Shown piece by piece: positions 36,106 through 39,978 of a DNA stretch of 64,000 nucleotides. The notes below the pieces were generated by a model. It had not been told where the DNA came from and searched no databases. It was given only the letters and a program-made list of their open reading frames with translations. Position numbers and translations under genes: made by a program. This DNA is from Podarcis pityusensis (Eukaryota). Numbering within the stretch: position 1 is the stretch's first letter; every line of letters begins with the position of its first letter. Where the stretch lies: the NCBI GenBank assembly GCA_964106645.2, contig OZ067043.1; one strand, given 5' to 3'.

Positions 36106-36450
36106 TATTATATTCCTGCCTGATCACTGAGGTCTTTGGGGGAGTCACTGTTAGTAATAGTTTTCTCCAGTGGCTTGCATTCACCAGGAGCCATGTGTTT
36201 AGTATTCTAGGCCCAATTTTATGGAACTTGAGTCTGATAGGCCCTCCTTCCTACTGAACTTCCAGTACCTCCTGAAGTACTTAACTTCTAGCAGGCATTT
36301 TAACTGATGTTTGTTTTTTTAAGGCTTAACTGATTTTTATTTTTGTGTTCTATCCTTGCAAGAGACTAATATAGTTAAGTGGTATATAAATGGTTAAATA
36401 GTGTGTACATTGTTTAAAACAAGCAATCAAAGTAACCCTTATATGTGTTT

Positions 36451-36875
36451 TGTTGGGTTTGGAACTTAACTGGTTAAGTTGTTCCCATGATGCCTCAGCA
36501 TTCTGACGTCAGCTTTCGAAGCTGGGAGGAGCTGGGAGGAGCTGGGAGGAGTTACGTTTCTGTTCCTCTCTGGTCTCTGAGAGAGAAGGTCGCAGTTTGG
36601 CATGGCTGCGGTGAGCCCAGGAGATTCCTGGGGAATGTCGGAATAAAGAACTGATATTAGACAAACCTGGACTCTGTGTGTGTTTGTCTGAAGCTAAGTG
36701 AAGCTACGTGACAGTTTTCACCGCTGTGTTCAACTCTGCTGAGGCGTGACTGGAGAGCTACTGGAGACGGAGCTGAGTGGCGCAGCTCGGAGGAAGCGCG
36801 CCGGGCATAAAGAGCTAATTGTGGATCGTAAATCAATTAGCGGGGGTCACGCCAAACCAATCAATCAATTCCACA
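36451..36875 (+). repeat. 5' LTR
   Basis: TGTTGGG...TTCCACA; CRE palindrome CTGACGTCAG 36503-36512; 3x GCTGGGAGGA 36521-36550; AATAAA 36642-36647. Confidence 0.95.
36771..36841 (+). ncRNA. Initiator tRNA-Met-like cassette in the LTR U5 region (not a canonical tRNA gene); second copy at 39267-39337
   Basis: AGCTGAGTGGCGCAGC(TCGGA)GGAAGCGCGCCGGG--CATAA---AGAG...TGGATCGTAAA aligns colinearly to recalled vertebrate tRNAiMet AGCAGAGTGGCGCAGCGGAAGCGTGCTGGGCCCATAACCCAGAGGTCGATGGATCGAAACC. Confidence 0.65.
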
Positions 36876-36889
36876 GGTTATGGACCCTT
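36876..36889 (+). promoter_or_regulatory. Primer-binding site, copia half-tRNAiMet type
   Basis: GGTTATGGACCCTT directly after the LTR, versus canonical copia PBS GGTTATGGGCCCAG (complementary to the tRNAiMet anticodon region). Confidence 0.8.
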
Positions 36890-38548
36890 AATCACCGATC
36901 GTAAAACTGTCACAGGAACGCTTTGAAGTGCCGGAATGCGTTTGAAGTTGCGGCAGGAGGTGGTGAGGTTTTTGCCTGTTGCTAAGAGGCAAAAGGAGTA
37001 GCTGCGGAGCTCAGAGCAGCTGGCTGAAAGACACAAAGTGGTTGCCTGTGTTGCTGCAGAGCTGCGGAGCTGAGAGCAGCAAGGAATCGTTTCCCCACGG
37101 ATGGGTGCCGGAGGAGCTTGTAATCTGTAAGTAAGCTTGGGCCCCTTGGGAGAACGGAAGACAATGGCAGGCAGCCAGGTCTTGGAGGACATTGCGTTTG
37201 AAATGCTCACTCTAAGAAGTTGAGCAAGGGCTGTCTGGGAATGTGCTGCTGCGTTTGCTGTGAAGCTTCAGCAGGAGGCCAGAGCCCTGGAGAAAGTATT
37301 GAGAAAAGCCTAGAGATGGCTGGTGCCCCTGTTCCTGATGCTTTAGCCTCAAGGAGTGCTAGTGAGCAGATCGGGGGGGCGAAGGATTCCAAAGGCAAGT
37401 GTAAAGGCTTGTCCACTGTGCGTGCTGGAGTGGAATGTCAACAAAGCAGGTTCCCAGAAAGCCGCAGTGGGAGCCAGGCCAGAGGGGGCGGAGCTGGCAA
37501 GGAGTGCTTTTCCGGAAGAAGGAGAAGGAGGCCGGCTGGGAGGAGCCCCGGGCAGTGTTTTTCCACTGGAGTTCGTCGTTGCTGCCCATGGAGAGCGGAG
37601 ACAGCTGGGCAGGAAGGAGGTCCCAAGGTCAACCAGCTGAGTTCCCATGGGAGTCAGTCTCGGAGAGGAGGCCAGCGTGGGAACGCAAGGGAAAGACGTG
37701 GCTCAGACGCTGGGGAGGGTTGTTTTCTTATCACTGCTTCTATGGCAACTGTGAAGAACAACTCCAGCCAGGACACGGTGACACGCTGGGTTTTGAATAC
37801 TGCTGTTGGTCAGCACCTGCTAAGCGAGCCTGCTGGCGAAATGCGGAACTGCAGGGCTGTTTCAACAGGAACAACTGTGATGTTAGCAGACGGAATGAGA
37901 AAGTCGGTTTCTGCTGTGGCTAACATGTCTTTTTCTCCTTTACAGGAGGAGCTAGAGGTCTACGTTGTGCCGGGACTGAATTGTTGTTTGTTATCTGTAT
38001 CAGCTCTAATGAAGCAGGGATACAAAATTTGCTTTGAAAATGACACCTGTTCCATTTTCAGAGGGGGGAAACAAGTGGCCAACGTGAAAAGGGGGCAGAA
38101 CAATCTCTTTGTTCTGGAGTCACCTCTGGAGGGTGGTGGGAATGCTGGAAAAGCACAGGCGCAGTGTGCTAAGGTTCCCAGTCATGTGCAAAAGTTGCAC
38201 AGGTGCACAAAAGGGTACAAACTCCGGAAATGTGGGAGGTCCCTAGGGTGCAGGGCATGCAAGGGTGCACAGGTACATGGTTTTCCCGGGTTTGGGAGGG
38301 TAGCCAAAGAGCCCTTTGAGCTCTTTGAGGCAGGTGGTCCAAAGGTTCAGGAAATGATCTTCTGTGGATATGATCCTGCAACCAATGGGTGGAAGTTTGC
38401 ATACCCAGAGGGTGATCAAACCAAGCTGCTGGTCAGTAAGCAGGCTGAGTTCTGTGAACAGGATGGGTGTTCAAGGCTCAGGGATGGTCCTGATTTTCTC
38501 TCAGAATGTCTGTCTGATTCTGAGGAGGAAAGGGAGCCAGAGGCTGAT

Positions 38549-38624
38549 CCCGGTGATGGGGACCAGGTCCAAGATCAGGGTTCAGAACCCGGTGATGGGG
38601 ACCAGGTCCAAGATCAGGGTTCAG
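38549..38624 (+). repeat. In-frame 39-bp tandem duplication in the copia ORF (PGDGDQVQDQGS x2)
   Basis: Direct repeat visible at 38549 and 38588. Confidence 0.9.
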
Positions 38625-38937
38625 GGCAGGTTTGGGCATCTCCAAAGGTTGTGAAAGGAGTGTCCAGGTGTGAGGCTTCATCTCCGGTTAGCGTAATGGA
38701 GAAAGCTCACAAACAGGGTGTCAAGTCAGAGGGGGAAGGATCTGACGGAGAAGACACAACTGCTGGCCCAAATGGGTCAGTAGGGTATCAGGTCACAAGT
38801 GCGTGGAAAAGTGTCGCACAGTGTGATTCTGGGAGTGTTGAAGGGGTTCAACAGGTGCCTGGGAAAGATGCCGGGAAGTGGCATAAGGCAAAAGGGAAGG
38901 TGTTGAACTCAAAAAGGTCTTGTCAGAATGGTTCGGC

Positions 38938-38946
38938 AAGAGGGGG
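38938..38946 (+). promoter_or_regulatory. Polypurine tract
   Basis: AAGAGGGGG immediately 5' of the 3' LTR. Confidence 0.8.
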
Positions 38947-39371
38947 TGTTGGGTTTGGAACTTAACTGGTTAAGTTGTTCCCATGATGCCTCAGCATTCT
39001 GACGTCAGCTTTCGAAGCTGGGAGGAGCTGGGAGGAGCTGGGAGGAGTTACGTTTCTGTTCCTCTCTGGTCTCTGAGAGAGAAGGTCGCAGTTTGGCATG
39101 GCTGCGGTGAGCCCAGGAGATTCCTGGGGAATGTCGGAATAAAGAACTGATATTAGACAAACCTGGACTCTGTGTGTGTTTGTCTGAAGCTAAGTGAAGC
39201 TACGTGACAGTTTTCACCGCTGTGTTCAACTCTGCTGAGGCGTGACTGGAGAGCTACTGGAGACGGAGCTGAGTGGCGCAGCTCGGAGGAAGCGCGCCGG
39301 GCATAAAGAGCTAATTGTGGATCGTAAATCAATTAGCGGGGGTCACGCCAAACCAATCAATCAATTCCACA
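38947..39371 (+). repeat. 3' LTR
   Basis: Same length and, by eye, same sequence as 36451-36875. Confidence 0.95.
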
Positions 39372-39978
39372 TGTTTGCTATCCTAGATTGCTGTTATTCA
39401 AATTCTGCATTTACATAGACATTATATCTCCACAGGGCACTAAAGGTATTGAACAGGATACAAACTGATTGAATAAGGTTATCACAATGATCCATCTCGC
39501 TTTGATAGGTTTTGGTATTGCTGCTATAAATTTGACTGTATTGATTACTGTGAACATGCAAATCAGTGGACAACTAATTGATGGTCATGGATTGAGTAAA
39601 ATAATATTAATGCTCATTGATGGATGGCAAACTCTCTCCCCTTATTTGGAGAGGACACCCTTCAGCTAGCAGGAGAGACAAAGAAGCAGCTAAAGCAAGT
39701 TGGATTTGGACACAAATTGAGACAGAACTGAAAGTTTTTAGCTGGGGTTGTCTAAAACCTGAAGCATTCTTGGGTGTAGTTCCTTGTTTGGAATGTGAAG
39801 TGGGATTAGCAGATCTGCTACTTGTTTTTAGGAGTTTCCTTGCTTCCAATATGTTTTGCTTCTAACATAAAGCCTCTTGGTTTCTCCTTCTACCATACGA
39901 ACCCTAAAGCTGTTTCCGTGGACTTCTCACAGTTCAGGAAAGTGTGGTTGACATAACAATATATCTTCTATAATAATA

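What the first reader, a model, noticed from the sequence alone, without database searches (positions are those of the whole stretch)
36743..36859. Copia-type LTR carries an initiator-tRNA-Met mimic folded into a cloverleaf-like module next to its tRNAiMet primer site
Seen: downstream of the LTR AATAAA (so probably U5), 36771-36833 aligns colinearly to vertebrate tRNAiMet (15/16 over AGCxGAGTGGCGCAGC, then GGAAGCGxGCxGGG, CATAA, AGAG and the initiator-specific GGATCG T-loop). This keeps Pol III A-box and B-box-like motifs. The cassette is closed by a perfect 8-bp stem GGCGTGAC (36743-36750)/GTCACGCC (36846-36853) followed by AAACCA. It also contains the hairpins GAGCTG-7nt-CAGCTC (36770-36788) and GCTAATTG...CAATTAGC (36814-36841), the latter presenting the T-loop-like sequence. 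These stems differ from the tRNA's own stems, suggesting re-evolved structure rather than simple decay. It ends ~20 nt before a PBS for the same tRNA species, and is duplicated at 39239-39355. Known: Cassandra TRIMs carry 5S sequence in their LTRs, and tRNA-like LTR cassettes have, as I recall, been reported for some tiny TRIMs. I do not know of a tRNAiMet mimic in a coding-derived vertebrate copia element. Inference: it could be an internal Pol III promoter, a self-encoded or self-processed primer, or a mimic that recruits tRNAiMet-handling factors or packaging by a helper element.
Basis: partly seen in the sequence, partly recalled or inferred. Interest (0 to 1): 0.85.

Follow-up and report, generated by a model that had tools for sequence, protein, structure and literature searches.

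The report
Primer-tRNA look-alike in copia LTR
A jumping gene in a lizard-type genome carries, just upstream of the site where initiator tRNA-Met primes its copying, both a copy of that tRNA's front half and a site that would bind that half; eight related elements share the arrangement, so it is probably part of the priming machinery and not a tRNA gene.

Summary
Window 36771-36810, in U5 of a young 2,921-bp non-autonomous copia-type element (identical 425-bp LTRs, TSD TGTTT), matches nt 1-37 of initiator tRNA-Met in sense (0 of 1000 shuffles reach the score; two control tRNAs give nothing). The PBS at 36876 pairs with the same tRNA's anticodon loop.

- ARAGORN and the Rfam tRNA model find no tRNA.
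- No U5 examined has a B box.
- A T5 run lies 198 nt downstream of the match.
- The look-alike does not complement the PBS.
So a Pol III gene and self-priming are both unlikely.

The new result is that the match is one part of a three-part module shared by eight elements of one copia clade (99/99 support; proteins 30-50% identical):
- an upstream U5 site antisense to tRNA nt 1-18/26 (window 36721-36740; -32 to -37 kcal/mol against about -21 for shuffles);
- the sense copy of the tRNA 5' half;
- a PBS with only 8-9 contiguous matches.

Relatives without the module have longer PBSs. My best reading is a two-part primer-binding site plus a primer look-alike that masks the site or hands the primer over. 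I found no earlier description. The mechanism is inferred, not shown.

The parts
36451..36875 (+). 5' LTR (425 bp, TG...CA); TSD TGTTT at 36446-36450 and 39372-39376
   Evidence: 100% identical to 38947-39371
36642..36647 (+). AATAAA poly(A) signal; everything from about 36665 to 36875 is taken as U5
   Evidence: position inferred from the usual 10-30 nt spacing, not measured
36721..36740 (+). U5 site antisense to tRNAiMet nt 1-18 (CCGCTGTGTTCAACTCTGCT); proposed second half of a two-part primer-binding site
   Evidence: duplex with tRNA nt 1-18 is -30 kcal/mol (nt 1-26 with 36702-36741: -32.4, against shuffles -22.2 +/- 2.8; 0 of 300 as low). 19/21 conserved in L012, where the whole LTR is 60% identical. 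ACTCTGC is the most shared 7-mer among 10 U5 regions
   Evidence: kept in L001 and L012 (one U-A to U.G change), absent in L002; competes with pairing of 36842-36848 to 36883-36889
36771..36810 (+). sense copy of tRNAiMet nt 1-37 (the primer look-alike): 32 identities, a 5-nt insertion in the D loop and a 2-nt deletion before CAT
36814..36841 (+). hairpin GCTAATTG-12 nt-CAATTAGC; its loop holds the T-loop-like GGATCG
   Evidence: both stem strands 8/8 kept in L012; loop motif not kept; stem absent in L002
36876..36887 (+). PBS GGTTATGGACCC, complementary to the tRNAiMet anticodon loop and stem (8 contiguous matches, 11 of 12)
36969..36973 (+). T5 run, the first Pol III-type stop after the look-alike
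37220..38965 (+). open 581-aa frame made of copia remnants (protease-region and integrase C-terminal SH3 traces); the element is non-autonomous
38938..38946 (+). polypurine tract AAGAGGGGG
38947..39371 (+). 3' LTR with the same module (antisense site 39217-39236, sense copy 39267-39306, cassette 39239-39355)

Best explanation
The cassette is part of a cis-acting module for starting reverse transcription. The module belongs to one clade of copia-type elements that prime from a 5' fragment of initiator tRNA-Met.

The module has three tRNAiMet-related pieces in a fixed order in U5:
1. an upstream site antisense to the first 18-26 nt of the tRNA (window 36721-36740);
3. a short PBS (36876 onward, 8-9 contiguous matches to the anticodon loop).

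Proposed working, all of it inferred:
- The primer fragment is held at two places. Its 3' end sits on the short PBS, and its free 5' part sits on the upstream site, which supplies most of the binding energy.
- The sense copy is the primer's look-alike in cis. On the RNA it can cover the upstream site until the better-fitting real tRNA displaces it.
- Once copied into minus-strand DNA, its complement can take the primer's 5' part off the template, so that reverse transcriptase can pass and RNase H can trim the primer.

What is shown here is the sequence relationships, their statistics, their order and their conservation across a clade. What is not shown is pairing in real RNA, any effect on priming, or which of the two roles of the sense copy applies.

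The closing stem and the 36814-36841 hairpin are extras of the window/L012 lineage. They are not parts of a tRNA fold.
For: **Sense similarity to tRNAiMet in relatives.** It is significant in the 250 nt upstream of the PBS in WIN, L002, L003, L005, L006, L008, L009 and L012 (p from below 0.001 to 0.02). L004, L007 and L010 show none. Control tRNAs show nothing consistent.

**Only the 5' half is copied.** The matches are colinear with tRNA nt 1-38 and never with the 3' half: WIN 1-37, L009 1-38, L006 1-33, L003 7-32 (with an exact 18-mer), L002 9-35, L008 10-31, L005 4-27, L012 2-32.

**Unbiased word census.** Of 1,706 distinct 7-mers in the U5 regions of 10 loci, the two most shared are ACTCTGC (antisense to nt 2-8, 6 loci) and GGAAGCG (sense nt 17-23, 5 loci).

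**The upstream site fits the real tRNA.**
- tRNA nt 1-26 pairs with U5 upstream of the sense copy at -32 to -37 kcal/mol, against about -20 to -22 for shuffles. This gives p <= 0.007 in 7 loci, 0.07 in L005, and no signal in the three loci without the sense copy.
- In 7 of 8 loci the site fits the real tRNA better than the element's own sense copy, which reaches only -14 to -23.

**One clade.** The carriers form a clade with 99/99 support, although their proteins are only 30-50% identical.

**Conservation against the nearest relative.** Between WIN and L012 the LTRs are 60% identical, but the antisense site is 19/21.

**Inheritance and not fresh copying.** Several sense copies share the same departures from the tRNA: T27 to C in WIN, L012, L006 and L002, and G30 to A in L012, L006 and L003. 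This argues for descent from one ancestor.

**PBS length.** Strong carriers have only 8-9 contiguous PBS matches. L005 has 16 and L007 has 14.

**Precedents.** Primer contacts outside the PBS are established for Ty1 (PMC3592414) and HIV-1 PAS (PMC1865047). A primer-tRNA mimic beside the PBS is established for HIV-1 (PMC5113203).
Against: - No experimental data of any kind. No RNA run could be laid on the stretch.
- The sample is 11 independent loci from a few, probably related, hosts. The PBS-length correlation rests on very few points, and L004 (9 nt, no module) does not fit it cleanly.
- The sense copy pairing with the upstream region is not better than shuffled controls (p 0.07-0.87), so the masking role is not statistically supported.
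- The sense copy is not especially conserved between WIN and L012 (53-70%).
- A sister subfamily seen in Logan contigs carries about 10 substitutions in the sense copy. In one species the 36764-36789 part is nearly missing from the contigs. Constraint on the sense copy is therefore weaker than on the antisense site.
- ACTCTGCT is ambiguous by nature. It is antisense to nt 1-8, but CTCTGCT is also the sense 3' acceptor strand. Some loci carry the sense-type flank (CTCTGCTA, CTGCTAC).
Confidence: 0.5

Rival explanations
1. By-product without function. Reverse transcriptase occasionally switches from U5 RNA to the packaged primer tRNA during minus-strand synthesis, leaving a sense tRNA piece in U5. 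Homology then lets the piece be re-copied from the tRNA from time to time, which keeps patches identical.
For: - Patches of perfect identity next to abrupt loss of similarity: an 18-mer in L003, an 11-mer in L005 and a 10-mer in L008.
- The sense copy evolves about as fast as the rest of the LTR between WIN and L012 and varies between subfamilies.
- Identity to the tRNA of about 85% in both WIN and L012 is what neutral decay from a perfect copy in their common ancestor would give.
Against: - It does not explain the antisense site, which is the best conserved block of U5 and fits the tRNA better than the sense copy does.
- Shared derived changes in the sense copies of distant lineages argue against repeated refreshment.
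- The fixed order and the restriction to one clade of deeply diverged elements fit inheritance under constraint.
Confidence: 0.17
2. A protein-recruiting tRNA mimic of the HIV-1 TLE kind. The sense copy is bound by a factor that handles tRNAiMet (methionyl-tRNA synthetase, the nuclease that cuts the tRNA at nt 39/40, or the element's own Gag or RT), which brings the primer or its processing to the PBS.
For: - The best kept sense part is the D-arm region (GGAAGCG(TGC), nt 17-26), which has no long complement other than the antisense site.
- Precedent in HIV-1 (PMC5113203, PMC5689005).
- The Ty3 review states that Ty5's primer end is made by RNase P cleavage in the anticodon loop (PMC5371799).
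Against: - No tRNA-like fold is detectable.
- The anticodon part, the main identity element for the synthetase, is the most degenerate part.
- Nothing here tests protein binding.
Confidence: 0.1
3. An internal Pol III promoter, that is a large relative of Helenus/TRIMp3 elements, giving a roughly 200-nt Pol III RNA or driving the element's own transcript.
For: - tRNA-derived sequences in LTRs are described as likely Pol III promoters in Helenus TRIMs, including copia-mobilised fungal ones with tRNAiMet anticodon-type PBSs (PMC10886601).
- An A-box-like word is present in WIN and L003.
Against: - No B-box-like word within 2 mismatches in any of the 11 U5 regions. The T-loop-like motif of WIN carries an inserted T and is lost in L012.
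- A T5 run 198 nt downstream would stop Pol III long before the 3' LTR. The element is 2.9 kb with an open frame.
- Autonomous 5-kb relatives carry the same module.
- Only the 5' half of the tRNA is conserved.
Confidence: 0.05
4. Self-priming as in Tf1. The element's own look-alike, cut at its nt-39 equivalent, anneals to the PBS and primes.
For: The look-alike has the primer's polarity and lies upstream of the PBS. Self-priming exists in Tf1-type elements.
Against: - The look-alike's 3' part does not complement the PBS (WIN GCATAAAG, L003 CCAGTACAC, L009 CGCCGAAC), whereas GGTTATGG is invariant and fits the real tRNA.
- It sits in mid-U5, so the cDNA made from it would lack R and could not make the first jump.
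Confidence: 0.02

Closest known systems
Half-tRNA priming of Drosophila copia and yeast Ty5 (PBS complementary to the anticodon stem-loop of tRNAiMet; primer is the 5' fragment)
   Same: Same superfamily. The PBS type GGTTATGG... lies directly after the 5' LTR. 5-bp TSD. The copied and bound tRNA part here is exactly that 5' fragment (background in PMC5371799 and PMC10886601).
   Different: As far as I could find, no U5 site for the primer's 5' end and no sense copy of the primer have been described for those elements. I could not read the original papers; Ke et al. 1999 is not held.
Ty1 extended tRNAiMet-RNA contacts (10-nt PBS plus boxes 0, 1, 2.1)
   Same: A copia-superfamily element with a short PBS, helped by further complementarity to the same tRNA (PMC3592414).
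   Different: The Ty1 boxes lie downstream of the PBS and pair with the T and D arms of a full-length tRNA bound by its 3' end. Here the extra site lies 60-150 nt upstream in U5 and fits nt 1-26 of a 5' fragment. Ty1 has no sense copy.
HIV-1 primer activation signal (PAS) in U5
   Same: A U5 motif upstream of the PBS that pairs with a second part of the primer and is masked in the unprimed RNA (PMC1865047).
   Different: The PAS is 8 nt and pairs with the T arm of tRNALys3. Here the site is 18-26 nt and pairs with the acceptor and D region. Masking by the sense copy is only a proposal.
HIV-1 tRNA-like element (TLE)
   Same: A mimic of the primer tRNA encoded next to the PBS (PMC5113203, PMC5689005).
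   Different: The TLE mimics shape and the anticodon loop and binds LysRS, with little sequence identity. Here there is plain sequence identity to the 5' half, the anticodon part is degenerate, and no tRNA-like fold is detected.
Helenus / TRIMp3 (Kojima 2024, PMC10886601)
   Same: A tRNA-derived sequence inside the LTRs of a non-autonomous LTR element. The fungal members are copia-dependent, have 5-bp TSDs and use tRNAiMet anticodon-type PBSs.
   Different: - Helenus is 311-1,263 bp and non-coding, keeps A and B boxes, and its tRNA-like part is reported to have no complementarity to the PBS.
- Animal Helenus is gypsy-dependent with 4-bp TSDs.
- Here the element is 2.9 kb with an open frame, there is no B box, the tRNA is the element's own primer, only its 5' half is kept, autonomous relatives carry it too, and it comes with an antisense partner site.
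Tf1 self-priming
   Same: An RNA segment with primer polarity upstream of the PBS in the same molecule.
   Different: The Tf1 segment is the 5' end of the transcript and complements the PBS perfectly. Neither holds here.

Membership tests
Ty1/copia LTR retrotransposon of the anticodon-primed (copia/Ty5) type | Two LTRs with TG...CA ends flanked by a 5-bp target duplication | tested here: met
   425-bp LTRs 100% identical; TGTTT on both sides
Ty1/copia LTR retrotransposon of the anticodon-primed (copia/Ty5) type | PBS directly after the 5' LTR, complementary to the anticodon loop and stem of tRNAiMet | tested here: met
   GGTTATGGACCC, 8 contiguous matches and 11 of 12 overall
Ty1/copia LTR retrotransposon of the anticodon-primed (copia/Ty5) type | Copia polyprotein (gag, protease, integrase before RT) | tested here: inconclusive
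   The window ORF has only weak Pfam traces (SH3_retrovirus E 0.0014, Pol_BBD 0.18). HMMER links it to full copia polyproteins carrying gag, rve and RVT_2. The element itself is a non-autonomous derivative.
Ty1/copia LTR retrotransposon of the anticodon-primed (copia/Ty5) type | The primer is a cleaved 5' fragment of tRNAiMet | not testable with these tools
   Inferred from the PBS type only
tRNA gene or tRNA-like structure | Cloverleaf recognised by tRNA finders or covariance models | tested here: not met
   ARAGORN finds 0 genes in the window. Rfam gives no tRNA hit at E <= 10 in 36400-39450 or at E <= 1 in seven relatives.
Helenus / TRIMp3 | Miniature non-coding element (311-1,263 bp) | tested here: not met
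   2,921 bp with a 581-aa open frame
Helenus / TRIMp3 | tRNA-derived sequence in the LTR | tested here: met
Helenus / TRIMp3 | Conserved Pol III A and B boxes | tested here: not met
   No B-box-like 11-mer (<= 2 mismatches) in any of 11 U5 regions; A-box-like word only in WIN and L003
Extended primer-template contact (Ty1 boxes, HIV-1 PAS) | Sequence outside the PBS complementary to another part of the primer, beyond chance | tested here: met
Extended primer-template contact (Ty1 boxes, HIV-1 PAS) | Conserved among diverged relatives | tested here: met
Extended primer-template contact (Ty1 boxes, HIV-1 PAS) | Pairing occurs and is needed for initiation | not testable with these tools
   Needs probing and priming assays
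Self-priming LTR element (Tf1 type) | Own RNA segment complements the PBS and lies at the 5' end of the transcript | tested here: not met
   the segment lies more than 100 nt downstream of AATAAA

The most novel reading that the evidence does not exclude
A so far undescribed way of handling a half-tRNA primer. The element's U5 encodes both a docking site for the primer's free 5' part and a copy of the primer. The minus-strand DNA made from that copy captures the primer's 5' part by strand exchange, which clears the docking site for reverse transcriptase and exposes the primer to RNase H. The trimming defines the plus-strand PBS copy, doing the job that the m1A58 stop does for 3'-end primers. 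On this reading the module is an old, selected innovation of one vertebrate copia clade.
Probability: 0.25. Interest if true: 0.78.

Novelty: new variant of a known kind. Interest (0 to 1): 0.62.

Why it matters
How copia-type elements that prime from an internal tRNA fragment hold, place and later remove that primer is poorly understood. Work on primer contacts outside the PBS has been done almost entirely in Ty1, Ty3 and retroviruses.

The module found here has an 8-nt PBS, an 18-26-nt docking site for the primer's 5' end, and a cis copy of the primer between them. It gives a concrete, testable model for this class.

It would also be a second, independent case of a retroelement encoding a look-alike of its own primer tRNA, after the HIV-1 TLE. 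The family is very abundant and recently active: the LTRs are identical, and contig depth is high in several species.

For annotation there are two lessons. tRNA-like stretches in LTRs are not all Pol III cassettes. And very short PBS matches may be real when a second site exists.

Tried and rejected
- **tRNA gene or cloverleaf.** ARAGORN and Rfam are negative in the window and in relatives.
- **Chance.** Rejected by shuffles and control tRNAs.
- **Whole-tRNA capture including the T arm.** The 3'-half match is marginal (p about 0.04) and is not conserved.
- **Pol III cassette and self-priming.** Rejected on sequence grounds.
- **Other copies in the window.** None besides the two LTRs.
- **The search for homologous proteins with the window ORF.** No hit.
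- **JGI metagenome scan.** A2 matched patterns, but no relative was confirmed.
- **Earlier notes of this scan.** Nothing by place or by words.
Only four alignable sequences. The stems are kept in WIN, L001 and L012 with one U-A to U.G change, and there is no decisive compensatory change.
- **Sense copy as a strong mask of the antisense site.** Not better than shuffles.
- **Expression.** All runs on offer were Logan contigs, no listed holder is on record as RNA, and the single read-laying run went to four DNA runs. Nothing can be said about transcripts, starts or ends.
- **Ke et al. 1999.** Could not be read.
- **By-products of normal reverse transcription.** I looked for one (plus-strand read-through into the primer, snap-back, PBS shift) that would give a sense copy upstream of the PBS. 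All of them give antisense copies or palindromes in the wrong order.
Full report
**The element**

Window 36451-39371 is a 2,921-bp LTR element.
- Its two 425-bp LTRs (36451-36875 and 38947-39371) are 100% identical and end in TG...CA. They are flanked by the 5-bp duplication TGTTT.
- A polypurine tract, AAGAGGGGG, precedes the 3' LTR.
- Directly after the 5' LTR comes GGTTATGGACCC (36876-36887). This is the complement of the anticodon loop and stem of initiator tRNA-Met, the PBS type of Drosophila copia and yeast Ty5 (background: PMC5371799, PMC10886601).
- The interior holds one open 581-aa frame (37220-38965) with only faint copia traces in Pfam. An exhaustive HMMER search links it to full copia polyproteins.

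Logan contigs of four species hold the family. In two of them the summed contig depth is very high.

**The observation**

I took the initiator tRNA-Met sequence from a paper that prints it (PMC8216282). Its first 30 nt are the same in zebrafish (PMC10341043).
- Local alignment to the LTR + strand scores 35, against 16.0 +/- 2.2 for 1,000 dinucleotide shuffles. None reaches it. Elongator tRNA-Met and tRNA-Lys give nothing on either strand.
- The match is tRNA nt 1-37 to window 36771-36810, with a 5-nt insertion in the D loop and a 2-nt deletion before CAT.
- The 3' half of the tRNA is represented only by TGGATCG-AAA-CA (p about 0.04).

**Is it tRNA-like in shape?**

ARAGORN finds no tRNA in the window. 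The Rfam tRNA model gives no hit even at E <= 10.

The 117-nt cassette alone folds into a four-way junction at -45.7 kcal/mol, z = -3.25. In 261 nt of context the z-score is -0.6. In the context folds the 3' strand of the closing stem pairs with the PBS instead.

**Relatives**

Through the HMMER hits I fetched the contigs that encode related proteins.
- L001 is a 98% identical copy with the same cassette.
- L012 is a non-autonomous relative in another vertebrate assembly, with identical LTRs of its own.
- L002-L009 are autonomous or degraded copia elements from ENA, Logan and NCBI records. L009 is from Podarcis lilfordi, according to the source's name for the protein it encodes.
- L010 and L011 are more distant.

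All of them have GGTTATG(G) directly after the LTR end.

**The sense copy is shared, and it is always the 5' half**

In the 250 nt upstream of the PBS, sense similarity to tRNAiMet is significant in these loci:

| Locus | p |
|---|---|
| WIN, L002, L003, L009 | < 0.001 |
| L012 | 0.001 |
| L005 | 0.004 |
| L008 | 0.016 |
| L006 | 0.021 |

It is absent in L004, L007 and L010. The control tRNAs give nothing consistent.

The matches are colinear with tRNA nt 1-38 only. L003 carries an exact 18-mer (nt 7-24), L005 an exact 11-mer and L008 an exact 10-mer. The copy lies 18-101 nt upstream of the PBS. None of the 11 U5 regions has a B-box-like word within two mismatches. None is seen as a tRNA by Rfam.

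**A partner site antisense to the tRNA's 5' end**

An unbiased census of the 1,706 distinct 7-mers in the 200 nt upstream of the PBS of ten loci puts two words on top. They are ACTCTGC (six loci; antisense to tRNA nt 2-8) and GGAAGCG (five loci; sense nt 17-23).

In the window the antisense word extends to CCGCTGTGTTCAACTCTGCT (36721-36740). This pairs with tRNA nt 1-18 at -30 kcal/mol.

Across loci, tRNA nt 1-26 pairs with the U5 stretch upstream of the sense copy at -32 to -37 kcal/mol, against about -20 to -22 for shuffles.
- p <= 0.007 in WIN, L002, L003, L006, L008, L009 and L012.
- p = 0.07 in L005.
- Not significant in the three loci without a sense copy.
- Only two of the 33 tests with the two control tRNAs reach p < 0.01.

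In seven of eight loci the site fits the real tRNA better than the element's own sense copy, which reaches -14 to -23. Between WIN and L012 the LTRs are 60% identical overall, but this site is 19/21. It is the longest invariant block in the four-way U5 alignment.

**One clade, old**

A maximum-likelihood tree places L002, L003, L005, L006 and L008 in one clade with 99/99 support. L004 is sister to it, and L007 and L010 fall outside with plant and algal copia. Proteins within the clade are 30-50% identical, and their U5 regions cannot be aligned apart from these pieces.

Several sense copies share the same departures from the tRNA. T27 to C is seen in WIN, L012, L006 and L002. G30 to A is seen in L012, L006 and L003. 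This speaks for descent from one ancestral copy and against repeated fresh copying.

**PBS length**

All strong carriers have only 8-9 contiguous PBS matches to the tRNA. L005, with a weak site, has 16. L007, with no module, has 14. L010 has 14 of 16 against the vertebrate tRNA sequence; I suspect its host's tRNAiMet differs at those two positions, but I did not test that. The sample is small and L004 (9 nt) is an exception. The trend is what a two-part binding site predicts.

**Interpretation**

The docking site has clear precedents in kind, namely the Ty1 boxes (PMC3592414) and the HIV-1 PAS (PMC1865047). A primer look-alike next to the PBS has one precedent, the HIV-1 TLE (PMC5113203).

What the sense copy does is the least certain part. 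There are two options.
- It may cover the docking site until the tRNA, which fits better, displaces it. This is not supported statistically.
- Its minus-strand DNA complement may strip the primer's 5' part from the template and hand it to RNase H.

Both are inference.

**Rejected readings**

- *Self-priming.* The look-alike's 3' part does not complement the PBS, and it lies in mid-U5.
- *A Pol III cassette of the Helenus/TRIMp3 kind (PMC10886601).* It is unlikely because there is no B box, a T5 run lies at 36969-36973, the element is long, and 5-kb autonomous relatives carry the same module.

The closing stem and the 36814-36841 hairpin are almost perfectly kept in L012: 31 of 32 stem bases, the one change giving U.G. 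They are therefore probably real features of that lineage. They are absent in L002 and beyond, and the T-loop-like loop motif is not kept.

**Variation within the family**

Variation within the family tempers the case for the sense copy.
- A sister subfamily, dominant in one species and minor in another, has about ten substitutions in 36762-36826. One of them, 36774 T to A, restores the tRNA's AGCAGAG. Others break the predicted D-arm-like hairpin without a listed compensation.
- In one species the contigs nearly lack 36764-36789.

**Limits**

- All relatives come from few, probably related, hosts.
- No RNA or cDNA data could be examined.
- No vertebrate repeat library was on hand, so prior description in Repbase or Dfam cannot be excluded. 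Kojima (PMC10886601) notes that 'not a few' Repbase LTRs contain tRNA-like parts.
- The 72-nt tRNA sequence used in scripts is the one printed in PMC8216282.

Noticed in passing
window 37127-37132; L003, L004, L005, L006, L008, L009 leaders: A splice-donor-like word (AGTGAGTA; GTAAGT in the window) is the most shared 7-mer in the 200 nt after the PBS of six relatives. This suggests a conserved intron or subgenomic RNA in the leader of this copia clade.
   Followed up: no
window 36504-36511 and 36520-36549: The U3 part of the LTR has a CRE-like palindrome TGACGTCA, also kept in L012, followed by three tandem AGCTGGGAGG units. These are likely promoter or enhancer parts.
   Followed up: no
It may be a loop-loop or dimer contact and not a T-loop relic.
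   Followed up: partly
window 37220-38965: The 581-aa frame stays open although it holds only remnants of copia protease and integrase regions. A 98% identical product occurs in another run (P0001) and a 54% relative in L012 (P0003). The non-autonomous family may still need a protein of its own.
   Followed up: no
window 36764-36789 (read laying, run X12): In one species the summed contig depth falls from above 5,000 to 141 over the 5' part of the sense copy, while the flanks stay high. That species' copies differ there or lack it.
   Followed up: no
L003 1300-1706: The contig runs from the end of a pol frame through a polypurine tract and a single LTR straight into PBS and gag. This is either a tandem pair of elements sharing an LTR or a collapsed assembly.
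   Followed up: no
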